A DNA stretch of 64,000 nucleotides. It comes from Saccharolobus solfataricus P2 (GTDB lineage: Archaea; Thermoproteota; Thermoprotei_A; Sulfolobales; Sulfolobaceae). Location: assembly GCF_000007005.1 (NCBI RefSeq), contig NC_002754.1; one strand, 5' to 3'. Under the pieces are notes generated by a model. It ran no database searches. It had not been told where the DNA came from and was given only the letters and a program-made list of their open reading frames with translations. Positions 1 to 50,474 of the stretch are shown piece by piece; position 1 is the first letter of the stretch, and each line of letters opens with the position of its first letter. Made by a program: the position numbers and the translations under genes.

Positions 1-271
1 CGGAAAGTGCGTATAGCATAATATTCGTACCTTTATCTCCATGTTTAATCCTCTCTATACTATCAATTAACTTGTCAACCTCGTCAATTTCATTGAAGAT
101 GGAGTGATAGCTCACTAACGAGTGAGCGGAGAAATAGAATTCATAGTCATATTTCTTTAAGCCTTCCCTTAAACTCTCCACGAACTTCTCGCTTTCTTTA
201 ATTCTTCCTAGACCTCTTAATGCCACTGCCAAAGTATAATTATTTAGAATTTTCTCCGTTTTTTCTCTTTT
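1..271 (-). pseudogene. 5'-truncated paralogue of the 9907..11070 helical-repeat gene (continues off the left edge)
   Basis: Positions 33..271 are identical to 10295..10533. Positions 1..32 are similar but diverged. Homology stops abruptly at 271, and no start is present before the ATPase gene. Confidence 0.85.
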
Positions 272-2212: not shown

Positions 2213-2776
2213 ATGGAAAGAAAGGGGACAGAAATAGAAAGAAATAAGATATCTTTTTTAAAGTGGCTTGAGCTAACATTATTATTTGTGATTTTGCCTT
2301 CAGTAGTGGCAGTCATACTATCATTCTCAATCCCTTACTATTTATTGCATAACATAACACTAGCAAACACTCTTAGTACAATAATTCCAATAATAGTATT
2401 TGGCATCTCAGTGGCTTATTTTGGCAAGTACCGCAAAAGTCATGGCATTATAACTCCCTTTATGAAAAGAACATCTATTCCAATTTTACCAGATAGTGGA
2501 CAACCAATTGACGAAAAGTATATTAAGAGTTTCGAAGCTGGGCTAAAATTTGTTAAAGGTGAAGAGTATATTAAACGTTTAGCTATGATTGGTATGATGT
2601 ATTTGCAAAATGCCGTTGCTTATGATAATAAAGACCTCTATTTGAAGGCTAAGGAATACTTATCAAAGGCTGAGGAGGCTATGAAGGGAAAGGATGTGAG
2701 ATTTGAGACTAGATTGTTGGTTGATAATTTGAGGAGTAAGATTGAAACGTATAAGTACCGTTTCGGAGAAAGATAA
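2213..2776 (+). CDS. Two-TM membrane protein with helical C-terminal domain; candidate immunity/accessory protein
   Basis: 187 aa with two hydrophobic segments near the N-terminus. A GGAGG-like SD precedes the ATG, and the gene lies directly downstream of the Cys-rich ORF. Confidence 0.7.
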   Translation: MERKGTEIERNKISFLKWLELTLLFVILPSVVAVILSFSIPYYLLHNITLANTLSTIIPIIVFGISVAYFGKYRKSHGIITPFMKRTSIPILPDSGQPIDEKYIKSFEAGLKFVKGEEYIKRLAMIGMMYLQNAVAYDNKDLYLKAKEYLSKAEEAMKGKDVRFETRLLVDNLRSKIETYKYRFGER

Positions 2777-2779
2777 GCA

Positions 2780-2977
2780 ATATCTGGCTAAACTGAGGAG
2801 TTATCTAAATAAAAAGAAAATTCTGAGTATAGTACACCACACGCTTTATGAGAAATTGAGAGAAGAGATCTCATTACCATCAAATATGGTTGAAAACCGT
2901 TATAGAGACGCTGTCTCAATATACAAGGTATGGCATAATAATCCTGACACAGAAAAGACAAGCCTCGCCCCTTCCAG
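2780..2977 (+). pseudogene. tnpB: N-terminal tnpB remnant plus left arm of an IS200/IS605 right-end hairpin
   Basis: LYEKLREEISLPSNMVENRYRDAVSIYKVWHNNP resembles Sulfolobus TnpB N-termini. AGCCTCGCCCCTTCCAG at 2961..2977 is the hairpin arm, whose partner is at 4167..4186. Confidence 0.5.
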
Positions 2978-4166
2978 CGATAGACCCAAAATCATCTTAC
3001 AAAAATAATTCTGATTGAACAATATTAAATTTGTTAAACATAACCAAGTTTATAACAACATTAAGAATTCAAGAAATTGGAAAAAAGGTTTAAAGCGAGA
3101 AAATCGGTATTACCATAAGGGTTTACGGTATGCCAATTCCCTCATTAAACATTCAACAAATAGTGTATAAATTACTTTCCATGATTAACTTCCACGGGAG
3201 GAAGGGAGAGGAAGCTACAAAAACCTCGGTCTCAGCATCATTACACAACGATTCAGTGGAAAAACGTTTCCAAAGCTTACAACGTATCACCACAAACAGT
3301 GAGGAATTACGTTGAAGAACAAGGATTACAAGTAGTGGAAAAATACTGGAATAAGTGAAACAAATCTCACTCGAAACGCTTAAGGACGTGAAGGAGATAG
3401 ATCTATCATTAGATTGGACAACTTGGTACGGAAAACTTGTAGAAGGTTTGGGAAGCTCAGAAAAGGGATACTCGTGGAACTACACAACAACGACGAAATA
3501 CGAGGGAAAAATCCTCATACTCGCCTTCATACCGCAAGTTAATGACAAAGGATGAGATTGTCAAGATCTTGATTGAACAAGTGGTTGCAATGGGATTTAG
3601 GATTAAACTGATAGCACTTGATGCAGGATTTTACACGGTTGAGGTGATAAAATTCATATCCCAGTTCAACTACATTATTGGAGTTCCCGTTAGTGATGTC
3701 AAGATCTACGAGGAGTTTGATGGTGAATATGTTACGAATAGTAAGAGGCGTAGTAAGGGTGAGCAGGTTAAATTTAGGCTGATCGTGTATAGGGAGAAGA
3801 TCAAGAGGAAAAAGAAGGAGGTTGTTTACTTCGCCAGGGGTACAAATCTCGATTTACCCAAGAATAAGGTCTTGGAGTAACAAGGTGAGGAATCCGATAG
3901 AAACGTCTTATAAGAGTGTTAAATCGTTCCTCCCCTTTACGTGTTCAACAAAGTTCATTTTCCGCATGTTAATCTTCTTACTTGACGTGCTCGTTTACTC
4001 CTTGTACACTATCCTCAAGGATAACGTGAAAATGAGGACTTTCAAATCACTAATTTCAAAAAATATTGAAAATATATCTGAGATAGAGATTTATTTAAGT
4101 AAATTGGAGGAAACGCTTACTAATACTACAGGTTTATTTTTAAGGAGGTGATTTTTGGGAGTACCG
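2978..4166 (+). mobile_element. Decayed ISH3-family element (ISC1225-like); transposase broken by frameshifts and stops
   Basis: Fragments NIQQIVYKLLSMINF, LSLDWTT, IALDAGFY and RNPIETSY. Imperfect TIRs CGATAGACCCAAAATC / CGGTACTCCCAAAAATC. Confidence 0.8.
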
Positions 4167-5076: not shown

Positions 5077-5135
5077 ATGTTACATTAGTACTAACCGTGT
5101 CATACGACATTGCTGAGGAATTTTTGAGGAAGGGG
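5077..5135 (+). pseudogene. 5' remnant of a PaREP1 gene, cut off by the structured RNA element
   Basis: Encodes VSYDIAEEFLRKG versus VYYEEAEEFLSKG of 9081..9446, with visible nucleotide similarity around AGTACTA and GCTGAGGA. Confidence 0.45.
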
Positions 5136-5306
5136 TCGGACTTTCATTGAGGTTTCATGAATTTGTATTCAACCCCTCGTCCTCATACCCCTTATTTTCC
5201 TCCCCATGCCGTCTACGGGACTAACTCCCTTCAAGGACATGGGGAGTTTCATTGGGTGCCTTCCTCCCCCTCACATTGCTCACAGAGTTCATTGTGGCAC
5301 CCTCTA
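5132..5306 (-). ncRNA. Structured K-turn-rich RNA, copy 1 (candidate omegaRNA-like guide scaffold)
   Basis: Homologous to 7443..7627. Stems GGGUGCC/GGCACCC and CUCCCCAUGUC/GGCAUGGGGAG, with repeated GA...AAUGA K-turn-like strands. TATA (TTTATAAA) lies ~30 nt upstream. Confidence 0.65.
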
Positions 5307-5326
5307 ACTTAATGTTAGCATGAAAG

Positions 5327-5334
5327 TTTATAAA
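5327..5334. promoter_or_regulatory. Palindromic TATA box, possibly bidirectional
   Basis: TTTATAAA has A-rich BRE-like flanks on both strands. It is correctly spaced for a leaderless ATG at 5357 (+) and for an RNA start near 5305 (-). Confidence 0.55.
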
Positions 5335-5356
5335 TTTTAATGCTTCTAACATTCTT

Positions 5357-5521
5357 ATGGAGCAAATAGTTTTCAGATCAACGGTCTCAAGTTATGGTAC
5401 AGATAAGTATGGGAATAAAAGATATGGCATAACAATACCTTCAAAACTAAGGGATAAGGGTGAGAAATTATACGGCAAGGAGGTGATTGTAATTGTTATC
5501 CTACCAGATGATGAGGAGTAA
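5357..5521 (+). CDS. Small AbrB/SpoVT-like (DUF2080-like) DNA-binding protein, 54 aa (below the ORF-track cutoff)
   Basis: MEQIVFRSTVSSYGTDKYGNKRYGITIPSKLRDKGEKLYGKEVIVIVILPDDEE* has the GITIP...GKEVIVIV swapped-hairpin pattern. It overlaps the start of the tnpB-like gene. Confidence 0.7.
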   Translation: MEQIVFRSTVSSYGTDKYGNKRYGITIPSKLRDKGEKLYGKEVIVIVILPDDEE

Positions 5522-6602
5522 ATTAATAGGGTCTAAGGAAGCACTTGATAACTTTCAATTCGTCACAATAAACGGTAAAGTGATTTTCAACGAGAAAGAC
5601 AAGGTTGTTAGGATTGCTAGGGTTTACTCACAAGTTGTTAAGAGTGCTATTAAACCGTTGTTTGATGGGAAGAGTGTTGATGAGTTAACTAAGGAGTTTT
5701 ATAATGTTTTACCTAACTATGTTTATCTTGAAACTGCTTTAAAGCAAGCTAAGACAATTGTTGAGGGTTTGTTAGAAAGGGAGGAAGAGAGGGGTGAGAT
5801 AATTCATGCAAGGATTAGAAAGTTCTGGTTTGGGAGTAGGGGTAATAAAAGTGATAGGGGTAATAGGAATATGAAGTTCCGCGTTTTAGAAGACCGCGTG
5901 TTAATTAAGGTTAGAGACCCGTGGAATAAGGAGTGGATTTTTGGGAAAGCTTATTTCGGTAAGGAGTACTTACCACTGCTTAAGGAGTTGGAGGATTTAG
6001 CTCAAAGGAAGGAGGAGGGTTACGGTGCTTTAGTAAGTTTTAAGGAAAAGTCGATGATTCACCTTCAAATCCCACTCTGGTTGTACTTGAAACACTTCTC
6101 TTTACCGAAGCCTACGGGTTACGGTTTGATTGCTGGTTTTGATTTAAATAGTGACAGACTGAACGTTGTTGTGATTAACAAAGATGGTAAAGTTATTACT
6201 ACTAGAACTTTTTGGTATTCAGATGTTACTAGGCCAGGTTTTCCGAAAGTGAAAGCTAGGGCTTTACGGTTAAACGCTTTATCTAACTCCCTGGAGTTCC
6301 TATCAAGGATTGGTGTTGATTACGTCGTTTTTGAGGATTTATTCCTAGTTAAGAGGAGGAAGTTTATCAAGAGTAAAAGTGGTAATAGGAAGATTAGCAA
6401 ATTTGCTAAGAAGCAGTTACTAATTCACGGTGTTATTAAATCTTTAAGGTTTGGTTTTAACGTCGTGTTGGTCAATCCTAAGGGTACTACTAACTCTGGG
6501 GAGCATGATAGGGTAATGAGGGAAAAAGGGTTTGACAAGCATACGGCATCAGCTTACTTAATAGCATTAAAAGGGTTAGGAATGTTGAATGATATTAAAT
6601 GA
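5493..6602 (+). CDS. tnpB: TnpB-like RuvC protein lacking the C-terminal zinc finger
   Basis: RuvC-I IAGFDLNSD, RuvC-II VVFEDL and RuvC-III-like GFDKHTASAYLIA. NPKGTTNSGEH replaces the NPxxTSxxCxxC ribbon. GGAGGTGA lies upstream of TTG 5493. Confidence 0.75.
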   Translation: MLSYQMMRSKLIGSKEALDNFQFVTINGKVIFNEKDKVVRIARVYSQVVKSAIKPLFDGKSVDELTKEFYNVLPNYVYLETALKQAKTIVEGLLEREEERGEIIHARIRKFWFGSRGNKSDRGNRNMKFRVLEDRVLIKVRDPWNKEWIFGKAYFGKEYLPLLKELEDLAQRKEEGYGALVSFKEKSMIHLQIPLWLYLKHFSLPKPTGYGLIAGFDLNSDRLNVVVINKDGKVITTRTFWYSDVTRPGFPKVKARALRLNALSNSLEFLSRIGVDYVVFEDLFLVKRRKFIKSKSGNRKISKFAKKQLLIHGVIKSLRFGFNVVLVNPKGTTNSGEHDRVMREKGFDKHTASAYLIALKGLGMLNDIK

Positions 6603-6603
6603 C

Positions 6604-6987
6604 ATGAACTTCACGACTTATCGGAAACTGTTGACAACGGCAAAGGATTACTTAAAAGCTTCCGAACTGTCATTTGAGCACAACCTTTATGAAGCCTCAG
6701 CATTAAACAGTGAAATTTCAGCCCAACTCTCCTTAATTTTCAAGTTAGGAATAGAGCCTCCCCGAACTCACGGGATTAGAGAGTTACTTTCATTAATATA
6801 CGCGAAACTTGGAGATAAAAGGATAAGTGACTTTACGAAGGAGAATAGAGAAAAACTCATTATTCTAGAGAACGTGAGAGGAAAGTCACAGTACGGTTTA
6901 CCTCCAGTGTCTAGGGACGAGGCTGAAATAGCTTTAAGTACTGCGCAGGAAATACTAAAACTTGTAGAATCATTATGGAACCTATAG
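6604..6987 (+). CDS. HEPN domain protein (COG2250-like) of a HEPN-MNT toxin-antitoxin pair
   Basis: AKDYLKASE...PPRTHGIRELL...SQYG...EAEIAL. The likely start is ATG 6604 (the ORF track starts at 6589). Confidence 0.8.
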   Translation: MNFTTYRKLLTTAKDYLKASELSFEHNLYEASALNSEISAQLSLIFKLGIEPPRTHGIRELLSLIYAKLGDKRISDFTKENREKLIILENVRGKSQYGLPPVSRDEAEIALSTAQEILKLVESLWNL

Positions 6988-7295
6988 AGAAGATAAAGTT
7001 ATTACGAAACTGGAGGGAAGCACTTAGAAAGCTTAACCTTGAAAGATTTGAAGAAGTATATGTGTTCGGCTCTGTAGTAAGCGACAAGATAACTGGGGCA
7101 AGTGATATTGACTTAATCTTGGTTATTAAACGGGGTGAAGATAGGAATAAAGCGCTAATAGGCTTCTTCGATGAGGTCGAGAGCAAACTAGGGGAGAAAG
7201 CATCATATCTGTTTGACGTTAAAGTAATTTATGAAGATGAGAAAGAATTACCGCCATACAAGTTCTTTCTCAGAGATGCAGTGAGAGTAAAATGA
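6975..7295 (+). CDS. Minimal nucleotidyltransferase (MNT) antitoxin
   Basis: VYVFGS...SDIDL motif. Overlaps the HEPN stop. Confidence 0.9.
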   Translation: MEPIEKIKLLRNWREALRKLNLERFEEVYVFGSVVSDKITGASDIDLILVIKRGEDRNKALIGFFDEVESKLGEKASYLFDVKVIYEDEKELPPYKFFLRDAVRVK

Positions 7296-7442
7296 CTTTG
7301 TCTGTAATATATTTACGTAACTTTTAGTCATTTCTAATTAACTTCTAATCCTCTTAAAGCTATTAGGTAAGTTGATGACATATGCCTATCAAGTTACCTC
7401 ACGTTCATAACCCAAAGCTTAAAATCTTTATAGTTAATTACT

Positions 7443-7627
7443 CAGAGAGTATCACTATGAACTCTATGAGCAGTTGAGAGGGGGAGGAAAGTACTCAATG
7501 AAACTCCTCATGTCGTGATTGGGAGGTAGGCTCCCTAACCTAGGCACGGGGAGGGAGAAGAAGTGATGAGACTGAGTAACTAGTAGTAATTAAAAATAAC
7601 TATTAGTTACGATGAAAGCCGAACTCT
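7443..7627 (+). ncRNA. Structured K-turn-rich RNA, copy 2
   Basis: Aligns to the reverse complement of 5132..5306 with compensatory stem changes (GAGUAU/GUACUC; CUCCUCAUGUC/GGCACGGGGAG). The 11-bp hairpin TAACTAGTAGT/ACTATTAGTTA is closed by CUGAG and CGAUGAAA. It has its own TATA-like element at ~7418. Confidence 0.65.
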
Positions 7628-8060
7628 GTTGTACTTCCTAAGATTTTAAAAGATAAGATAGTTCATCTTAATACACAGAAGATTTTTGCGTGCTTTTTTA
7701 GGGTATTATTGCCGTTGCCAACAGTTTTCGATAAACCGTAAAGTTTATATTATTTTGCATATATATTTATAAAAGTTGAAACAATCCACAAACCATCACT
7801 TTTCTCTACTTTTTAAGATATCTCCTCACTAAGATATCAGGAGGGATATTGTTAGAGAATGCTATTCGATAAATTGTTGATTAGTATATAATGAACATCT
7901 TAAACAAGATCCCACCCACTATTATTGCTAAAGTTATCATAAAGAGTATTTTGTAGTTCTTCAAAGAATCCCTACTTGTCATTATAGATAAGCCTAAAAG
8001 TAACGGGCGACGGATCTATTAAATAAGCTGCTGAAAAATTTACTAGTGCCTCAAATATAA

Positions 8061-9080: not shown

Positions 9081-9446
9081 ATGAGTATAAGTACTAGTGC
9101 AGAAGTATATTACGAGGAGGCTGAGGAGTTTTTATCTAAGGGTGATCTTGTTCAAGCTTGCGAGAAGTATTATAAGGCTGCTGAGGAAGCTATAAAACTT
9201 CTCGTTATAGAAAATAACCTAAAAGAAATAACAAATAACGTTAAGAACAAAGGAAGATGGAAAAGCGAAAACTTGTTTAAAGCTTCCAAATTGTTACGAA
9301 GTAATAACACTGAAATACCAATTCTATGGAAAAGTGCATGGACTCTTCATGTGGAAGGATTCCACGAGCTTAGTTTAAACGAGAAGGAAGTTAAAAAACT
9401 TAAGGAAGATGTTAGAAAACTGGTCATATTTGCAGTTAATAGTTAA
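9081..9446 (+). CDS. PaREP1 family protein
   Basis: AEEFLSKGDLVQACEKYYKAAEEAIK...LHVEGFHE signature. Confidence 0.9.
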   Translation: MSISTSAEVYYEEAEEFLSKGDLVQACEKYYKAAEEAIKLLVIENNLKEITNNVKNKGRWKSENLFKASKLLRSNNTEIPILWKSAWTLHVEGFHELSLNEKEVKKLKEDVRKLVIFAVNS

Positions 9447-9906: not shown

Positions 9907-11070
9907 TTATATAAAGGATAAAGATATTTTAAGTCTGTTGGATACAGATTGACCCGCCATACTCAAGATAAACTCAAAGATGAAACGATAAAAGGGAGCA
10001 TTGTTCATAAGCTCTAGAATTCTATTGTCCTTAATATTGGCGTAAGCTATTCCTAGTGAACTAGAGATTTCATCTAAATAGAATAAGTAGTTACTTTCTG
10101 CGGTAATTTCATTTATTATATTAAATAGAATATCCGGTTTGTCTACTGACTCCAAGAAAATGATCCCGACGTTAATTTTCACGTCACCTTTTAACTTCTG
10201 AAAGGCTTCCAAAGCAATGTCTAAGTATCTTTCCTTGTTAGTGTAGATATAAGCTGTATTAGCGGAAAGAGCGCGCATCATACTATTTGTGGTCTTATCT
10301 CCATGTTTAATCCTCTCTATACTATCAATTAACTTGTCAACCTCGTCAATTTCATTGAAGATGGAGTGATAGCTCACTAACGAGTGAGCGGAGAAATAGA
10401 ATTCATAGTCATATTTCTTTAAGCCTTCCCTTAAACTCTCCACGAACTTCTCGCTTTCTTTAATTCTTCCTAGACCTCTTAATGCCACTGCCAAAGTATA
10501 ATTATTTAGAATTTTCTCCGTTTTTTCTCTTTTTACTCTTTCATTAAGCATAAGAGCGTCTTCAACCAATTCTGACCTGGCCGGTTCCTTATCAAACCTA
10601 ATTGCTATACTCCTTAGAAATTCAGAAATATTGGATTCAGTATTATAAGATGGATTATCTCTTAACAATCTCATGAAATACTCCATAGGATCATAATCCT
10701 CTAATAGGTGAGAACATTCTGCGATTACCCCCATTAAAGCTAACTTGGAATACGTAGGCTTCCTTCCACTGAGGCATTCGAGAAGAATAAGCGTATTAGA
10801 AACTAAAACCTTATCCTCAACAATTCTCTTATTTTTCTGAAGTATTATAGACATAGTATCCTTGTCTCCCATTATTAGGTAAACTTCAGCTAGTTTAACT
10901 AAGTGATCAGCAGAATGATCTCTCCTCTTTAAGATCTTATAGTACTCGTCCAGCTCATCTTTAGTTAGAATATTTTCCGAAGCTCTGTATAGATAATAAT
11001 AAATCTCGGCAAATCTCCTTTCATAGGCACTTAGACCCCTTGTGAGTTCCTCAACTTCTTTGAAGTCCAT
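9907..11070 (-). CDS. Hypothetical all-helical (TPR-like) protein
   Basis: 387-aa ORF with helical periodicity. A partial near-identical copy lies at 33..271. Confidence 0.75.
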   Translation of the reverse strand: MDFKEVEELTRGLSAYERRFAEIYYYLYRASENILTKDELDEYYKILKRRDHSADHLVKLAEVYLIMGDKDTMSIILQKNKRIVEDKVLVSNTLILLECLSGRKPTYSKLALMGVIAECSHLLEDYDPMEYFMRLLRDNPSYNTESNISEFLRSIAIRFDKEPARSELVEDALMLNERVKREKTEKILNNYTLAVALRGLGRIKESEKFVESLREGLKKYDYEFYFSAHSLVSYHSIFNEIDEVDKLIDSIERIKHGDKTTNSMMRALSANTAYIYTNKERYLDIALEAFQKLKGDVKINVGIIFLESVDKPDILFNIINEITAESNYLFYLDEISSSLGIAYANIKDNRILELMNNAPFYRFIFEFILSMAGQSVSNRLKISLSFI

Positions 11071-24371: not shown

Positions 24372-25886
24372 TTATTTTTTGATTCTCTCAAATACATTAG
24401 CTAATTTTAGAACCTTGTCTTCTTCAAAATGCCTTCCTATTATCATCAGACCGACTGGTAAACCATTCGAATATCCCACTGGTATATTCATAGCAGGGTG
24501 TCCAGTAACGTCAAAAGGAGCTGTATTATTTATCATTCCGAGCGCCATTATAAAATATTCATCAAAGCCTGGTTCACTCTTATACCTCATTGCTTTCATA
24601 GGAGTTGTTGGCATTATTAGAGCGTCGTATTTCCTTAACGCACTGTCGTAAGCTTCCTTTAACACAATCGATAAATTTCTTGCCTTTGCGTAGTATCTAT
24701 TGTTATACATCTTTATCATTAAGTAGCCTAACATTAGTACACCTTTTACCGTGTTTGGTAAATCTCTAGCTCTGGATTTTAAGGAGTTCCCAAAGAAATC
24801 TGCAATTTGAGTCTCAAATAAGCCCTTCCTTCCCCATCCTACACCACTTCCTAATATCATGGTTGCTGTGGCACCCTCAATAGCTATTGGAGTCCATATA
24901 TCCAATCCCATCCTATGAAGAGGTATGGAGGTATCCTCTACTTTTATTCCATAATCTTCTAGTTTCTTGGCAGAATCTAATACTAACTCATCAACATCCT
25001 TTTCAGAATTGGACCAATTAAATCCTTCCTTAACTATGCCAACTTTCATATCTTTTACGTCGCCATCAATAAGTTTAGAATAGGGTTTGACTGGAGGTGG
25101 AGGTAGGCTATCTGGCTGTCTTGAATCCAATTCATCCCTCCCTGCTATTACCTCTAAAAGTAATGCTACATCCTTTACCGTATTAGCCATAGGTCCTAGA
25201 TGATCTAATGTAGGCTCTATGGAAAAAGCGCCGGTATATGGAACTAGTCCATGAGTTGGTTTTAGTCCGTATATGCCAACCCACGAACTGGGAATTCTAA
25301 TTGAACCTCCTTGATCTCCTCCAACAGCCATATCACAATAGCCAGAAGCTACTGCTACAGCACTACCGCTTGATGATCCTCCTGCCATATACTCTGGATT
25401 TCTCGGATTTAGTACTGGCCAAGGATAAGATGTATGACTACCTCCTGAGAAGCATAGGTCCTCACACGTAGTCTTAGCTACGATTTCTCCAGCCTCATCC
25501 AGAATCCTTGAAACTACAGTAGCATCCATATGCGGGACAAAACCTTCTAACATTTTAGATCCATTAAGCATAGGTATACCCGCTATCATCACATTGTCCT
25601 TAATGCAAATCCTTTTTCCCTTTAACTTACCCTCTTCCTTACCCTTTATCGAAGTTATCCACACTAAAGCACCATAAGGATTCTCCTCTTTCATAGGTGG
25701 TCGACCTAATGTTCTCTGATACTTAACTCTTGGAGTATAATCTGGCAAGGAGTCTAACCTCTCATAGGATTCCAACTGCAGTTTTAGTAATTGCAAAAAG
25801 GATTTTAACTCCTCATCCTCTAGATCTAAATTAAATTGCTTAGAAATCTCTCTTAAATCCTCCAATGTGGGTAACTTAATTCCCAT
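24372..25886 (-). CDS. Amidase signature family enzyme
   Basis: IKDN, GGSSSGS and [11 protein letters not shown] motifs. Confidence 0.95.
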
Positions 25887-25997
25887 AAAATATTTTAGTA
25901 AGGCAATCTTATAAACAAAAGTTTTAAAAGAAGCATTACATGCTTCGTATCTAACAGATCTGAGTTTGTAACCGTAGGATGGAGAATAGCTTTATAA

Positions 25998-27306
25998 CAG
26001 ACGGGGGTTCAAAGGGGGCGGAAAACTTCTCTTTGAGATGAATCCCTTTGTAGAAAAGTTAAAAATAGGAAAATAACGAAATACACATCAATGCCCACCT
26101 TAGGGTTTCGCTTCCGTGCTTACGCTGACGAACAAACCCTTAGGGCGTTAAAAGCCCAGTTGAAGTTAGCGTGCAAAATCTACAACACCTTAAGGTGGGC
26201 AGACATCTATTTCTATCAGAGGGATGGGAAAGGACTAACACAAACTGAGTTAAGACAGTTGGCTCTAGATCTGAGAAAACAAGATGATGAGTATAAGCAA
26301 CTCTACTCGCAAGTAGTTCAACAAATAGCTGACCGTTATTACGAAGCTAAGAAGAGGTTTTTCGAAGGTTTAGCACGTTTCCCAAAAGAAAAGAAACCTC
26401 ACAAGCACTACTCCCTTGTCTATACGCAAAGCGGTTGGAAAATACTTCACGTTAGAGAAATAAGAAAAGGCAAGAAGAAACTAATAACGCTTAAACTATC
26501 AAATCTTGGTACATTCAAGGTAATTATACACAGGGACTTTCCCCTTGACAAAGTAAAGAGGGTGATAGTGAAGCTAACAAGATCTGAGAGGATATACATC
26601 ACTTTCGTAGTTGATCACGAATTCCCCAAGTTACCTAACACTGGTAAGGAAGTGGCGATAGATGTTGGTGTAGAAAAGTTGTTAGTAACGTCAGATGGTG
26701 AATATTTCCCCAATCTGAGACCTCTTGAAAAGGCGTTATGGAAAGTGAAGCATCTACACAGAGAACTTTCAAGGAAGAAGTTCCTCTCTCATAATTGGTT
26801 TAAGGCTAAGGTTAAGCTTGCTAGGGCTTATGAGCATTTGAAGAATCTAAGAACGGATCTTTACATGAAGTTGGGTAAGTGGTTTGCTGAGCATTATGAC
26901 GTTGTGGTGATGGAGGGTATTCACGCTAAACAACTTGTGTGGGTAAGTCCTTGAGGTCTCTGAGGAGGAGGCTGAGTGACGTGGGATTTGGTGAGCTGAG
27001 GGATGTGCTGAAGTATCAGCTGGAAAAATACGGAAAGAAACTCATCCTAGTTAATCCTGCATACACTTCCAAAACTTGTGCTAGGTGCGGGTATGTGAAA
27101 AATGACTTGTCTCTATCTGATCGTGTTTTCGTTTGTCCCAACTGTGGTTGGATTGCAGATCGTGACTATAATGCTTCTCTTAACATTTTGAAGAGTGCGG
27201 GGTCGGAGCGATCCTTAGTGCCTGTGGAGCTCCGCCCTCTACCAGTACTCTGGCATGGCAGAGCTGTGAAGCAGGAAGCTCCCTCATTTATGAGGGGGTA
27301 GCTCAC
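25998..27306 (+). mobile_element. ISC1316-like IS200/IS605 (IS1341-type) element, tnpB only
   Basis: Left-end hairpin follows TTATAA. Right end is CCCTCATTTATGAGGGGGTAGCTCAC. Highly similar to 49064..50394. Confidence 0.9.
26091..27301 (+). pseudogene. tnpB: tnpB with a frameshift at ~26939 (CTTGTGTGGGT)
   Basis: Two ORFs: the first carries RuvC-I AIDVG and RuvC-II VMEG; the second carries the Zn finger and DRDYNA. Confidence 0.9.
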
Positions 27307-44352: not shown

Positions 44353-44789
44353 GTTATAGACGTTTACGTTTGTCCTAACAATAATTTAAAATATATTATA
44401 AATATATTATAATTTATTATTTCTTTATTATTTTATTTTCTGATTTTAATGTCGTCTTATTCTCATACTAAATAGGAGGAAAGAAATTTCGATCTATAAT
44501 GTATAGATAATTATGATTTAATTATAGAACTATCATCGTTAAAAGAGTATAAGTATTACTTTACGTAAATTTATCTCAAATCCCTTAAACCTTAAATACC
44601 AAGATAGATTCTCCTCAAGGAGATTTAAGTAATCGTAAATAGTTAGAGCGTAAATAGTATAAATACACCTTATTTTATAATTGGAAAGATTAAACATTAT
44701 ATATCATACATCATTTCCAAGAGACTACTATATGAGGTTAGTACTTAACTACCCCGATAATGGGGCGGACAAGGATAAATGGAGAAAAG

Positions 44790-44870
44790 TTCAGTGACTT
44801 CGGTGAAGCCCAAGGTCTGAGGATTAATATTAAATATTATGAAATCCCATGAAGCCAAAACCCTTTTACC
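44790..44870 (+). mobile_element. Orphan IS200/IS605 3'-end (omegaRNA-like) remnant
   Basis: GGTCTGAG-hairpin-ATGAAATCCCATGAAGCC, with a right-end-like ACTACCCCG...GGGGCGG nearby. Confidence 0.4.
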
Positions 44871-49063: not shown

Positions 49064-50394
49064 GTGAGCTACCCCCTCATAAATGAGGGAGCTTCCTGCT
49101 TCACAGCTCTGCCATGCCAGTACCGAAGTGCTGGTACTGGTAGAGGGCGGAGCTCCACAGGCACTAAGGGTCGCTCCTACCCCGATCCACGTAAGATGTT
49201 AAGAGAAGCATTATAGTCACGATCTGCAATCCAACCACAGTTGGGACAAACGAAAACACGATCAGATAGAGACAGATCTTCTTTTACGTACCCGCACTTA
49301 GCACAAGTTTTGGAAGTGTATGCTGGGTTGACCAGGATGAGTTTCTTACCGTATTTCTCCAACTGATACTTAATCAAATCTCTAAGCTCGCTGAACGCGA
49401 CGTCACTCAATCTCCTCCTCAGAGACCTTAATGACTTACCTATCAACTGCTTAACATGAATACCCTCCATGACTGCAACATCGTAATGCTCAGCAAACCA
49501 TTTACCCAACTTCATGTAAAGATCCCTCCTCAAGTTCTTCAAATGCTCATAAGCCCTAGCAAGCTTAACCTTAGCCTTAAACCAATTATTAGAGAGGAAC
49601 TTCTTTCTTGAAAGTTCTCTGTGTAGATGCTTCACTTTCCATAACGCCTTTTCAAGAGGTCTCAGATTGGGGAAATATTCACCATCCGACGTTACGATCA
49701 GCTTCTCTATGCCAACATCTATCGCCACTTCCTTACCAGTGTTAGGTAACTTGGGGAATTCGTGATCAACTACGAAAGTGATGTAAATCCTCTCAGATCT
49801 TGTTAGCTTCACTACCATTCTCTTTACTTTGTCAAGGGGAAAGTCTCGGTGAACTATTACCTTGAACGTACCAAGATTTGATAGTTTAAGCGTTATTAGT
49901 TTCTTCTTATTCTTCTTGCTTCCTTTTTCTTATTTCTCTAACTTGAAGTATTTTCCAACCGTACTGGGGATAGACAAGGGAGTAGTATTTGTGAGGTTTC
50001 TTTTCTTTCGGGAAACGTGCTAAACCTTCGAAAAACCTCTGTCTAGCTTCGTAGTAACGGTCAGCTATTTGTTGAACTACTTGCGAGTAGAGTTGCTTAT
50101 ACTCATCATCTTGTTTTCTCAGATCTAGAGCCAACTGTCTTAACTCAGTTTGTGTTAGTCCTTTCCCATCCCTCTGATAGAAATAGATGTCTGCCCACCT
50201 TAAGGTGTTGTAGATTTTGCACGCTAACTTCAACTGGGCTTTTAACGCCCTAAGGGTTTGTTCGTCAGCGTAAGCACGAAAGCGAAACCCTAAGGTGGGC
50301 ATTGATGTGTATTTCGTTATTTTCCTATTTTAACTTTTCTACAAAGGGATCCATCTCAAAGAGAAGTTTTCCGCCCCCTTTGAACCCCCGTCTG
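49064..50394 (-). mobile_element. Second ISC1316-like element
   Basis: Same ends as 25998..27306 in reverse orientation; also preceded by TTATAA. Confidence 0.9.
49177..50302 (-). pseudogene. tnpB: tnpB with an extra A in an A-run (~49925) and an early TAG near the C-terminus
   Basis: Two ORFs matching the 26091..27301 protein. Confidence 0.9.
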
Positions 50395-50474
50395 TTATAA
50401 TTAGTGTAATTGTTAATGACAGTCCTCACGGTTGTAGGAGTAGTGATACTATTAATGTCCCAAACCCCTTCCTA

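What the first reader, a model, noticed from the sequence alone, without database searches (positions are those of the whole stretch)
7443..7627. Covarying multi-K-turn RNA architecture
Seen: stem P1 is GGGUGCC/GGCACCC in copy 1 and GAGUAU/GUACUC in copy 2. P2 is CUCCCCAUGUC/GGCAUGGGGAG versus CUCCUCAUGUC/GGCACGGGGAG. A 3' hairpin has completely different sequence in the two copies but keeps its pairing. Stems are closed by GA on one strand and a 3-nt bulge plus GA (AAUGA/GAUGA) on the other, the canonical kink-turn signature. Copy 2 also has GUGAUGA-GA-CUGA (box C/D-like K-loop). The 3' CUGAG-hairpin-RAUGAAA module reappears in the IS605-type remnant at 44817..44844, which supports an omegaRNA relationship. 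Inference: L7Ae-stabilised thermostable guide scaffold.
Basis: partly seen in the sequence, partly recalled or inferred. Interest (0 to 1): 0.7.

Follow-up and report, generated by a model that had tools for sequence, protein, structure and literature searches.

The report
Kink-turn guide RNA of archaeal transposon
The flagged sequence is a degraded, miniature copy of a roughly 185-base structured RNA, rich in kink-turn motifs, that always sits next to a compact TnpB-like (CRISPR-Cas12-ancestor) gene in a mobile element of heat-loving archaea and is most likely that protein's guide RNA, in a layout I could not find described.

Summary
The window has two inverted copies of a ~185-nt RNA, at 5132-5310 (-) and 7443-7627 (+). 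Their stems covary across 33 pattern-found and 44 protein-anchored homologues (96-98% paired, against 40-55% when partners are slid).

Rfam knows only a 73-nt core, Sso133 (sR133, listed as a C/D box sRNA).

Copy 1 belongs to a 1508-bp insertion element (5132-6639). The element carries a 54-aa ORF and a 369-aa TnpB/Cas12-fold protein without a zinc finger. The RNA is transcribed divergently from a shared TATA box.

In 46 of 46 protein-anchored metagenome loci the RNA sits at this position. RNA conservation stops exactly at the element end, next to 67 different flanks, as at an omegaRNA scaffold/guide boundary.

An empty site at window 25839-25841, compared with an occupied site in S. shibatae, shows the element is a discrete insertion.

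Copy 2, the finding itself, is a 328-bp miniature derivative (7300-7627) with several mismatches.

The 3' domain holds two back-to-back kink-turn consensus motifs. Their GA dinucleotides are conserved in 33-41 of 41 copies. L7Ae binding is plausible but untested.

Verdict: a new architectural variant of the TnpB omegaRNA system, interest about 0.7.

The parts
5132..5310 (-). RNA copy 1, the omegaRNA-like scaffold of the full-length element. In RNA sense the order is: 5' GA, then P1 (5302-5296 with 5257-5251) enclosing a K-loop hairpin (CUC-UGU-GA-loop-GA-GGG). Next come AAUGA and the irregular P2 hairpin, which is the Rfam Sso133 core at 5262-5200. Last is a type A 3' domain with nested kink-turn motifs, ending ...GUCCGACCCC at 5132.
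   Evidence: Rfam scores Sso133 at 62.6 bits, above the gathering threshold of 44. The fold has z = -4.3. The element end was fixed by the empty site and a length of 1508 bp.
5327..5334 (.). Palindromic TATA box (TTTATAAA). It lies about 26 nt upstream of the RNA 5' end in one direction and about 25 nt upstream of the ATG of the small ORF in the other. This makes it a shared bidirectional promoter.
   Evidence: Read directly from the sequence. The AAATTTATAAAC box is conserved at the same distance in the homologues. The start-site distance is inferred from general knowledge of Sulfolobales promoters.
5357..5521 (+). A 54-aa ORF with an AbrB/MazE-like sequence pattern (...YGITIPSKLRDK...). Its 3' end overlaps the start of the TnpB-like ORF, so the two are probably translationally coupled.
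   Evidence: tblastn shows it conserved at 48-100% identity in the same position in the homologous loci. The AF2 model has pLDDT 88 but finds no PDB fold hit, and there is no Pfam hit. The label rests on the motif and on the 'RHH/MazE-TnpB' description in PMC10691335.
5493..6602 (+). A 369-aa TnpB/Cas12-superfamily protein (Pfam SSO2105_N family). D217 and E281 are invariant. The motif D348-K-H350 stands in the RuvC-III region. There is no zinc finger. The likely true start is the ATG at 5508.
   Evidence: NCBIfam TIGR01765 gives 4e-20, with weak TnpB and Cas12f2 hits. A family profile hits the Cas12X, Cas12f and TnpB RuvC regions at E 4e-6 to 1e-3. The AF2 model has pLDDT 89.7. Foldseek finds Cas12k, Cas12f, TnpB 8iaz and Fanzor2 at E 1e-10 to 1e-5 and TM about 0.5.
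6603..6639 (+). The protein-side end of the element, which is the 'LE' in RNA orientation: ...CGGAAACTGTTGACAACG. It is followed by GC (6640-6641), a dinucleotide found next to this end in all 16 type-1 copies and also present in the empty site. GC is therefore a candidate target or TAM motif.
   Evidence: Conservation drops sharply at this point. Flank table. Empty-site junction.
7300..7627 (+). A 328-bp miniature (MITE-like) element that contains the finding. It has a type-2 protein-side end (GTCTGTAATATATTTACGTAAC) and about 40 nt of the reverse-complemented 3' end of the tnpB-like gene. An A/T-rich promoter region follows, and then RNA copy 2 at 7443-7627 with a type B 3' domain.
   Evidence: The same architecture, left end and deletion junction occur in L008, L011, L013 and L015; L027, L031 and L035 share the left end. 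Copy 2 scores only 31.4 bits on Sso133. It has an A.C mismatch in P2 and mismatches in S1 and in the NC stem (sequence).
7713..7750 (+). A fragment of a third element. It has a type-1 protein-side end (CGTTGCCAACAGTTTTCGATAAACCGTAAA) preceded by TGC, and no recognisable RNA follows it.
   Evidence: Sequence. BLAST of the copy-2 flank hits the corresponding ends of other loci. nhmmer finds no third RNA.
25839..25841 (.). Empty target site. In Saccharolobus shibatae B12 (locus L003) a 1511-bp element of this family is inserted exactly here.
   Evidence: L003 3479-3632 matches window 25995-25841 at 95.5%. L003 5144-7375 matches window 25839-23610 at 87.8%. The junction sequences are, and a joined-flank BLAST spans the site.
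44750..44857 (+). The solo 3' end of a canonical TnpB omegaRNA of IS607 type. It carries a GGUC-UGA-GGAUU...AAUCC-CAU-GA-AGCC kink-turn hairpin, the same kind of module as Kt-b of the RNA under study.
   Evidence: It is 81% identical to L007 6272-6385. That stretch overlaps the 3' end of a 433-aa zinc-finger TnpB gene lying beside a serine recombinase gene.

Best explanation
The RNA is the guide-RNA scaffold (an omegaRNA analogue) of an unusual IS200/IS605-like, tnpB-only insertion element of Sulfolobales and related Thermoprotei.

Element layout, in RNA orientation: a left end next to a short conserved target motif (GC, usually TGC, for type 1); then the tnpB-like gene and a small AbrB/MazE-like gene, both on the opposite strand; then a palindromic TATA box that fires in both directions; then the ~185-nt RNA. 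The last conserved base of the RNA is the right end of the element. Transcription therefore runs on into whatever DNA flanks the insertion, which would give each copy a private 3' guide.

Proposed mechanism, step 1: the zinc-finger-less 369-aa TnpB/Cas12-fold protein binds the scaffold.

Step 2: it uses the 3' flank-derived guide to recognise 'target motif + guide match'. That combination is the empty or excised donor site. Recognition would trigger cleavage and homing or retention of the element, as shown for canonical TnpB.

Step 3: the scaffold is built from kink-turn-type motifs. These are a K-loop hairpin inside P1, a GA...AAUGA junction at the base of P1, and two back-to-back kink-turns in the 3' domain that resemble box C/D plus C'/D' without guide spacers. 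In these archaea such motifs are the natural ligands of L7Ae, which would rigidify the scaffold at 75-85 C.

Shown here: the structure and its covariation, the strict genetic linkage, the TnpB/Cas12 fold, the element boundaries, mobility, and miniature derivatives.

Inferred: RNA-protein binding, guide use, DNA cleavage, and the role of L7Ae.
For: Linkage:
- The RNA lies divergently upstream of the gene pair in 46 of 46 protein-anchored metagenome loci that have at least 430 nt of upstream sequence.
- The same holds in L001, L003 and L004.
- Distant homologues at 47%, 42% and 34% protein identity also have a TATA box plus a K-loop-containing RNA at that place.

Protein:
- AF2 gives pLDDT 89.7. 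The best PDB matches are Cas12k, Cas12f, TnpB and Fanzor2.
- A family profile hits the RuvC-II region of Cas12 and TnpB.
- D217 and E281 are invariant over homologues down to about 25% identity.

Guide-like boundary:
- Conservation ends at ...GACCCC or ...GAACUCU, and 67 different flanks follow with no fixed terminator.
- This is the criterion used to define omegaRNA scaffold/guide boundaries (PMC10278001).

Mobility and targeting logic:
- An empty site and an occupied site differ by exactly the element, with no target-site duplication.
- GC precedes the other end in 16 of 16 type-1 copies and is present in the empty site. The empty site therefore reads TTGC-T-TAGAAATC..., that is, motif followed by the guide match.
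- Miniature derivatives with both ends occur at many sites.

Structure:
- The 3'-domain pairs are 92-100% paired with GC<->AU swaps.
- The kink-turn GA dinucleotides are conserved in 41/41, 41/41, 41/41 and 33/41 copies, and L3 is always U.

RNA level and strand:
- 151 of 916 helix cells are G.U wobbles, against 17 non-pairs. On the other strand those wobbles would be mismatches.
- Expression: the core is the experimentally found sRNA sR133/Sso133 (Rfam hit; listed in S. solfataricus circRNA-seq, PMC3326292).

Shared module: a canonical Sulfolobales TnpB omegaRNA end carries the same GA-hairpin-NAUGA kink-turn module.
Against: - No experiment links this RNA to the protein, to DNA cleavage or to L7Ae.
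- The layout breaks the canonical rule. The RNA is on the opposite strand from tnpB and upstream of it, and it does not overlap the 3' end of tnpB.
- Altae-Tran et al. 2023 (PMC10691335) treat what appears to be this clade (RHH/MazE-TnpB, RIIIr-4) as non-mobile. They see it as a possible toxin-antitoxin pair whose guide, if any, lies in the 3' UTR.
- The RuvC-III residue may be His instead of Asp, so the nuclease chemistry is uncertain. Two of 14 close homologues have D217N.
- No conserved target motif was seen next to type-2 left ends.
- The empty site differs by one extra T.
- About 40% of pattern-found RNA copies are orphans.
- Some Caldisphaera copies have lost the GA pairs of one kink-turn.
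- The kink-turn assignments rest on consensus matching only.
Confidence: 0.68

Rival explanations
1. The RNA is a regulatory or antitoxin-type RNA of a MazE-TnpB toxin-antitoxin-like module. It would control expression or activity of the divergent operon, for example by sequestering the nuclease or by promoter interference. It would not supply a guide.
For: The gene pair has been proposed to be a toxin-antitoxin system (PMC10691335). The RNA shares a bidirectional TATA box with the operon. The element sits beside other toxin-antitoxin genes (HEPN-MNT) in the window.
Against: This does not explain why RNA conservation stops exactly at the element boundary. It does not explain why miniature elements keep the promoter and RNA together with both termini while losing both protein genes. 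The RNA has no complementarity requirement to the operon mRNA, because the two are divergent and do not overlap.
Confidence: 0.12
2. The conservation is at the DNA level. The ~185 bp would be the transposon's right end, whose single-strand hairpins are recognised by a trans-acting transposase. Transcription would be incidental.
For: IS200/IS605 ends carry structured sub-terminal hairpins. The two 3'-domain types mostly travel with the two types of opposite end. Miniature elements keep this region.
Against: A length of 185 nt, with four helices and conserved unpaired GA/NAU motifs, is far more than a transposase end needs. A promoter is conserved at a fixed distance. The core was isolated as a cellular sRNA. 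The end-type correlation is not absolute: L083 combines a type-1 end with a type B RNA. In canonical TnpB elements the same DNA serves both roles, so this rival is not exclusive.
Confidence: 0.08
3. It is an atypical box C/D sRNA, as sR133 was annotated, that works with L7Ae, Nop5 and fibrillarin in 2'-O-methylation.
For: Type B copies have exact box C (GUGAUGA) and box D (CUGA), plus C'/D'-like boxes. sR133 is listed as a C/D box RNA. There is a weak SNORD20-like hit at 22 bits, E 2.2.
Against: The spacers between C and D', and between C' and D, are 2-4 nt instead of about 12 nt, so there is no methylation guide. The C/D-like part is only the 3' third of a 185-nt RNA. Strict linkage to a TnpB-like gene and a position at a transposon end are not C/D sRNA properties. 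No Rfam C/D family reaches its threshold.
Confidence: 0.04

Closest known systems
TnpB omegaRNA (reRNA) of IS200/IS605 and IS607 elements (OMEGA systems)
   Same: It is linked to a TnpB/Cas12-fold gene. It lies at one end of an element that has no terminal inverted repeats and no target-site duplication. The scaffold ends at the element boundary, with flank-derived sequence 3' of it. The opposite end abuts a short conserved target motif. It shares a terminal GA-hairpin-NAUGA module with a canonical Sulfolobales omegaRNA end.
   Different: It has its own promoter and lies on the opposite strand, upstream of the tnpB-like gene, rather than overlapping the gene's 3' end. A small AbrB/MazE-like gene is part of the unit. 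The protein lacks the zinc finger. The scaffold is dominated by kink-turn motifs. Activity has not been tested.
RHH/MazE-TnpB, clade RIIIr-4 of Altae-Tran et al. 2023 (PMC10691335)
   Same: It is an archaeal (crenarchaeal) TnpB. A small AbrB/MazE-type gene sits immediately upstream. There is no C4 zinc finger. A conserved His (H350) stands in the RuvC-III motif region.
   Different: That paper describes the group as non-mobile, suggests a toxin-antitoxin role, and looks for the guide in the 3' UTR. Here the elements show insertion polymorphism, miniature derivatives and 67 distinct sites, and the conserved RNA lies upstream and divergent. That my family equals their clade is inferred from the description and was not checked against their sequence lists.
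Rfam RF02814 Sso133 (Sulfolobus sRNA133; 'C/D box sR133')
   Same: Copy 1 matches the whole 73-nt model at 62.6 bits. L001 and L004 match at about 90 bits.
   Different: The Rfam model covers only the 3' strand of P1, the AAUGA motif and hairpin P2. It omits the 5' K-loop domain and the 3' double kink-turn domain, and it carries no functional or genomic context. Copy 2 falls below the gathering score, at 31.4 bits.
Archaeal box C/D sRNA and the U4 snRNA-type kink-turn
   Same: Type B has S1-GAU-GA-GGCC / GGCC-GA-S1. This equals a C stem, a 3-nt bulge with L3 = U, tandem G.A pairs and a Watson-Crick NC stem. The box C GUGAUGA and box D CUGA consensus is present, and a second, inverted motif resembles C'/D'.
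   Different: There are no 10-12-nt guide spacers. The two motifs share one 4-bp NC helix. The module is embedded in a larger RNA, and there is no evidence for Nop5 or fibrillarin.

Membership tests
Rfam RF02814 Sso133 | Covariance-model score at or above the gathering threshold (44 bits) | tested here: met
   Copy 1 (5200-5262, minus strand) scores 62.6 bits. Copy 2, the finding's own coordinates (7488-7553), scores 31.4 bits, below the threshold.
TnpB omegaRNA (OMEGA guide RNA) | Genetic linkage to a TnpB-family protein gene | tested here: met
   46 of 46 protein-anchored loci carry the RNA. The protein has a TnpB/Cas12 fold.
TnpB omegaRNA (OMEGA guide RNA) | Scaffold ends at the transposon end, and sequence conservation drops sharply where the flank-derived guide begins | tested here: met
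   Sharp boundary in 33 plus 40 copies. 67 distinct flanks. The boundary coincides with the insertion junction.
TnpB omegaRNA (OMEGA guide RNA) | Encoded on the same strand as tnpB, overlapping or following its 3' end | tested here: not met
   The RNA is on the opposite strand. Its 5' end lies about 185 nt upstream of the TnpB-like start codon, across a shared TATA box.
TnpB omegaRNA (OMEGA guide RNA) | Forms an RNP with TnpB and directs TAM- and guide-dependent DNA cleavage | not testable with these tools
   This needs biochemistry or interference assays.
Kink-turn (k-turn) motif / L7Ae ligand | C helix, 3-nt bulge, tandem sheared G.A/A.G pairs and an NC helix, at sequence level and conserved while the helices covary | tested here: met
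   Two motifs in the 3' domain. GA is present in 41/41, 41/41 and 41/41 copies, and in 33/41 for the fourth position. L3 = U in all. The S1, NC and hairpin pairs are 92-100% paired with GC<->AU swaps. The K-loop stem at 25-27/43-45 is 100% paired, with CG<->GU exchange.
Kink-turn (k-turn) motif / L7Ae ligand | Kinked three-dimensional geometry and binding of L7Ae | not testable with these tools
   No paper linking TnpB and L7Ae was found. That sR133 came from an L7Ae-associated library is my recollection only and was not verified.
Box C/D sRNA | Boxes C/D and C'/D' separated by guide spacers of about 10-12 nt | tested here: not met
   The boxes are present, but the spacers are 2-4 nt and are base-paired with each other.
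IS200/IS605-type (tnpB-only, IS1341-like) insertion element | Discrete insertion without terminal inverted repeats or target-site duplication | tested here: met
   Empty and occupied junctions compared. The termini are GGGGTCGG... and ...CAACG, with no inverted repeat.
IS200/IS605-type (tnpB-only, IS1341-like) insertion element | Conserved short target sequence abutting one end only | tested here: inconclusive
   GC (YGC in 14 of 16) precedes all 16 type-1 ends and is in the empty site. No motif is visible outside the 20 type-2 ends.
IS200/IS605-type (tnpB-only, IS1341-like) insertion element | Mobilised by a Y1 (TnpA) transposase acting on single-strand end hairpins | not tested
   No transposase gene lies within the element, and a trans-acting partner was not sought.
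RIIIr-4 / RHH-MazE-TnpB clade (PMC10691335) | No C4 zinc finger between RuvC-II and RuvC-III | tested here: met
   No Cys pairs are present. hhalign against a canonical TnpB shows VNPKGTTNS aligned to VNPYHTSKSCPKCG, and the finger is missing.
RIIIr-4 / RHH-MazE-TnpB clade (PMC10691335) | RuvC-III catalytic Asp replaced by His | tested here: inconclusive
   D348 and H350 are both nearly invariant. No alignment reached RuvC-III, so which residue is catalytic is undecided.
RIIIr-4 / RHH-MazE-TnpB clade (PMC10691335) | Small AbrB/MazE or RHH gene directly upstream | tested here: inconclusive
   A conserved 54-aa ORF is always there. Neither Pfam nor Foldseek confirms its fold.

The most novel reading that the evidence does not exclude
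This would be a three-component archaeal OMEGA system. A zinc-finger-less TnpB uses a separately transcribed omegaRNA whose scaffold is assembled on the host kink-turn protein L7Ae. The RNP would be built like a box C/D sRNP but would aim a nuclease at DNA. That would be a mechanistic bridge between transposon guide RNAs and C/D-type guide RNPs, and a naturally thermostable 369-aa RNA-guided nuclease.
Probability: 0.3. Interest if true: 0.85.

Novelty: new variant of a known kind. Interest (0 to 1): 0.7.

Why it matters
TnpB is the ancestor of Cas12 and a compact genome-editing scaffold. Every characterised TnpB takes its guide from the 3' end of its own transcript.

Here a whole archaeal clade (227 clusters at 50% identity) has a separately promoted, oppositely oriented guide-like RNA made largely of kink-turn motifs. 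This bears on four points:
1. It would identify the missing RNA partner of the 'MazE-TnpB' group. The literature treats that group as immobile and possibly a toxin-antitoxin pair.
2. It shows that these elements do move and spawn miniature RNA-only derivatives.
3. It suggests a host RNA-binding protein (L7Ae) as a cofactor of a transposon RNP.
4. It gives function and context to an orphan Rfam family that was annotated as a C/D box sRNA.

The proposal can be tested directly in Saccharolobus islandicus laboratory strains or in vitro.

Tried and rejected
- Rfam whole-window and relaxed scans found only Sso133. The weak snoRNA-like hits are not significant.
- There are no tRNAs in the window.
- A call with a non-existent model id failed. 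I used nhmmer in place of a covariance model.
A5 worked.
- The element has no match in the plasmid or phage collections.
- A direct phmmer search of the protein against PDB sequences found nothing. A profile and a fold search were needed.
- Pfam has no hit for the 369-aa or 54-aa proteins in the local copy.
- The fold search for the 54-aa protein gave no significant match.
- hhalign against a canonical TnpB aligned only the RuvC-II region, so the RuvC-III question stays open.
- Literature searches for Sso133, SSO2105, TnpB+L7Ae, RIIIr-4 and sR133 found no description of this RNA-protein pairing.
- My recollection that an L7Ae RIP-seq paper reported a transposon-derived K-turn RNA family was wrong for PMC5539422.
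- I first thought RNA 3'-domain type A always goes with end type 1 and type B with end type 2. L083 breaks the rule.
- A possible third kink-turn inside the type A hairpin was dropped, because covariation favours a plain Watson-Crick stem with an AUGA bulge.
- The idea that type-2 elements equal ISfinder's ISC1476 (lengths 1458-1480 bp) comes from memory of the name and from the length only. The one paper that mentions ISC1476 notes an ncRNA within it but gives no sequence.
Full report
**What is at the coordinates**

The window is from a Sulfolobales-type genome. The stretch 7443-7627 (+) aligns over its whole length with a second copy on the minus strand at about 5310-5132. These are the only two copies in the window.

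Rfam recognises a 63-nt piece of copy 1 (5200-5262) as Sso133, 'Sulfolobus sRNA133', at 62.6 bits. The same piece of copy 2 reaches only 31.4 bits, below the gathering score of 44. The Rfam model covers just the 3' strand of P1, the AAUGA motif and hairpin P2.

Both copies fold better than shuffled sequence. Copy 1 has z = -4.3 and copy 2 has z = -2.3.

The claimed P2 covariation is not: copy 2 has a U.G wobble and an A.C mismatch there.

**Homologues and covariation**

I collected two sets of homologues. A pattern scan of one genome per species found 28 archaeal copies, from Sulfolobaceae, Stygiolobus, Metallosphaera, Acidianus, Caldisphaera, Desulfurococcales and other Thermoprotei. It also returned 4 bacterial chance hits.

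Because that pattern fixes some columns, I built a second set that does not depend on RNA sequence. It came from 80 metagenome loci found through the neighbouring protein.

Results for P1, the inner K-loop stem and P2:

| Set | Cells paired | Slid partners | Pairs with double-sided changes | Shuffles reaching observed |
|---|---|---|---|---|
| Pattern set, 33 sequences | 95.8% | 41-50% | 10 (slid: 1-3) | 0/500 |
| Protein-anchored set, 44 sequences | 98.1% | 40-55% | 9 (slid: 0-2) | 0/500 |

In the second set 151 of 916 cells are G.U wobbles and only 17 are non-pairs. This points to selection on this strand at the RNA level.

**The 3' domain and the kink-turn motifs**

The 3' domain occurs in two sequence types:
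- Type A: GGGG-UAU-GA-GGAC-GA-[hairpin]-AAU-GA-AA-GUCC-GA-CCCC
- Type B: GGAGU-GAU-GA-GGCC-GA-[15-bp hairpin]-GAU-GA-A-GGCC-GA-ACUCU

In both types an outer stem, a 3-nt bulge ending in U, a GA, a 4-bp helix, a second GA, a hairpin, a second NAU-GA and a final GA form two back-to-back kink-turn consensus motifs. The two motifs share one non-canonical-side helix.

Across types the stems swap G-C for A-U and stay 92-100% paired. The GA dinucleotides are kept in 41/41, 41/41, 41/41 and 33/41 protein-anchored copies.

Many type B copies carry exact box C (GUGAUGA) and box D (CUGA). The 'spacers' between boxes are only 2-4 nt and are paired with each other. This is therefore not a methylation guide.

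A K-loop-type hairpin (NNC-NNU-GA-loop-GA-GNN) sits inside P1. A GA...P1...NAUGA arrangement closes P1.

The K-loop module and covarying stems recur in RNAs next to protein homologues of only 47%, 42% and 34% identity.

All kink-turn assignments are consensus matches. The kinked geometry and L7Ae binding were not and could not be tested.

**Genomic context**

Copy 1 is transcribed away from a palindromic TATA box (5327-5334). The same box faces a 54-aa ORF (5357-5521) and an overlapping 369-aa ORF (5493-6602).

Evidence on the 369-aa protein:
- It matches the TnpB N-terminal model TIGR01765 at 4e-20 and gives weak TnpB and Cas12f hits.
- A family profile hits the RuvC regions of Cas12X, Cas12f and TnpB.
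- A confident AF2 model (pLDDT 89.7) is most similar to Cas12k, Cas12f, TnpB and Fanzor2.
- D217 and E281 are invariant over homologues down to about 25% identity.
- D348 and H350 are nearly invariant, and there is no zinc finger.

The family is small, with 227 clusters at 50% identity.

These features fit the 'RHH/MazE-TnpB' group within clade RIIIr-4 of Altae-Tran et al. 2023: no zinc finger, a small upstream AbrB/MazE-like gene, crenarchaeal hosts, and a conserved His in the RuvC-III motif region. That paper regards the group as non-mobile, suggests a toxin-antitoxin role, and looks for a guide in the 3' UTR (PMC10691335). I found no paper describing an upstream RNA for it, or linking TnpB with L7Ae or kink-turns.

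**Linkage**

In all 46 protein-anchored loci with enough upstream sequence, the RNA lies divergently upstream at the same distance. The converse is weaker. In the pattern-found set about 40% of RNA copies lack an intact neighbouring gene.

**A mobile element with a guide-like end**

RNA conservation stops abruptly at ...GACCCC (type A) or ...GAACUCU (type B), and 67 different flanks follow with no fixed terminator.

On the other side, conservation ends about 37 nt past the TnpB-like stop codon in type-1 ends (...CTGTTGACAACG). In type-2 ends it stops about 24 nt past the stop codon (...TTACGTAAATGTGTTACAGAC). Element lengths are 1488-1525 bp for type 1 and 1458-1480 bp for type 2.

A direct comparison proves insertion. 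In S. shibatae B12 a 1511-bp element separates two sequences that are adjacent in this window at 25839-25841. There is no target-site duplication and no terminal inverted repeat.

In RNA orientation the empty site reads ...AAATTGC-T-TAGAAATCTC.... The GC that precedes the left end of all 16 type-1 copies is already present in the empty site. The sequence after it is what the inserted copy's RNA would carry as its 3' extension.

That is the 'target motif plus guide match' logic of TnpB homing. It comes with one unexplained extra T, and no motif was found for type-2 ends.

**The finding's own copy**

Copy 2 has no protein genes. About 140 nt upstream of it lies a type-2 left end (7300, GTCTGTAATATATTTACGTAAC), followed by roughly 40 nt of reverse-complemented tnpB-like 3' end.

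The same miniature architecture, with the same left end, occurs at unrelated sites in several genomes (L008, L011, L013, L015, L027, L031, L035). L008, L011, L013 and L015 also share the same deletion junction.

The finding therefore sits in a 328-bp MITE-like derivative (7300-7627). Its RNA has accumulated mismatches in P2, in S1 and in the shared 4-bp helix.

A further left-end fragment lies at 7713-7750. The full element and the miniature element bracket a HEPN-MNT gene pair, with their left ends facing inward.

**The 44.8-kb module**

Window 44750-44857 is 81% identical to the region overlapping the 3' end of a canonical 433-aa zinc-finger TnpB gene. In locus L007 that gene lies next to a serine recombinase gene. 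The window stretch is thus a solo IS607-type omegaRNA end.

It contains GGUC-UGA-GGAUU...AAUCC-CAU-GA-AGCC, the same kind of kink-turn hairpin as in the RNA studied here. It suggests that kink-turn modules are a general feature of Sulfolobales omegaRNAs.

**Interpretation**

The best-supported reading is that this RNA is the guide-RNA scaffold of an IS200/IS605-like, tnpB-only element in which the protein operon has the opposite orientation to the RNA.

Shown: structure, linkage, protein fold, boundaries, mobility and miniature derivatives.

Inferred: RNP formation, guide use, DNA cleavage and a structural role for L7Ae.

Rival readings are less consistent with the exact coincidence of the RNA end and the element end, with the RNA-retaining miniature elements, and with the missing guide spacers. 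The rivals are a regulatory or antitoxin RNA, a purely DNA-level transposon end, and a true C/D box sRNA.

**Novelty**

The RNA core is in Rfam and was listed as 'C/D box sR133' (PMC3326292). The protein clade has been catalogued.

As far as I could check, four things are new: the pairing of the two, the divergent self-promoted layout, the kink-turn-built scaffold, and the evidence that the clade is mobile. I rate this a new variant of a known kind.

Noticed in passing
window 6589-7295, with elements at 5132-6639 and 7300-7627: A HEPN-MNT (minimal nucleotidyltransferase) toxin-antitoxin-like pair is bracketed by the full element and the miniature element in inverted orientation. Both protein-side ends face the pair. 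The first ~17 codons of the annotated HEPN ORF are encoded by the element's end, so the insertion probably replaced or extended the original HEPN start.
   Followed up: partly
window 7713-7750: An isolated type-1 element end (TGC|CGTTGCCAACAGTTTTCGATAAACCGTAAA) is followed by a TATA-like box. No recognisable RNA follows. It is a remnant of a third element only 85 nt from the end of copy 2.
   Followed up: partly
window 25839-25841: An unoccupied target site, corresponding to an occupied site in Saccharolobus shibatae B12. About 2.2 kb on one side and about 150 bp on the other are syntenic.
   Followed up: yes
window 44750-44857: The solo 3' end of an IS607-type TnpB omegaRNA, with no tnpB gene upstream. 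It carries a kink-turn hairpin.
   Followed up: yes
window 1-271 and 10263-10533: 96% identical direct repeats lie 10.26 kb apart. The second lies inside a 387-aa ORF (9907-11070, minus strand), so the window starts inside a paralogue. The repeats bracket the whole region studied here.
   Followed up: no
window 25992-27306 versus 49064-50400; also 22025-22324/50475-50774 and 27930-28120/28674-28864: Large inverted and direct repeats at 87-100% identity, probably copies of other insertion sequences. They lie close to the empty site.
   Followed up: no
L092 1-114 (RNA-side flank): One element is inserted into the 3' part of the tnpB-like gene of another copy of the same family. This is a nested insertion at the position equivalent to window 6432-6526.
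   Followed up: partly
L010, L018, L023, L030, L035, L109 (Caldisphaera-type copies): In the inner kink-turn the non-bulged GA is replaced by UU. In some copies GAUGA becomes AAUAA and the outer CCGA becomes CCAA. These coordinated changes would turn sheared G.A pairs into A-U pairs. Several of these copies sit next to frameshifted or deleted protein genes.
   Followed up: partly
L045 335-539: An 18-nt insertion (AGCTTCCGGTTTTATATA) lies in the purine-rich linker between P2 and the 3' domain, so that linker tolerates length changes.
   Followed up: no
L063 1447-1499 and L120 1577-1629: The 53 nt flanking the RNA end in these two loci are exact reverse complements of each other, and homology ends beyond them. 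This is unexplained. It may be a palindromic or inverted segment at the insertion site.
   Followed up: no
window 2742-4151 (+): A run of short overlapping ORFs looks like a frame-shifted, decayed transposase gene of another IS family.
   Followed up: no
window 9081-9446 (+): A PaREP1/PaREP8-family gene (Pfam 2.4e-34) with a weak HEPN-like N-terminus lies about 1.5 kb from the miniature element.
   Followed up: no
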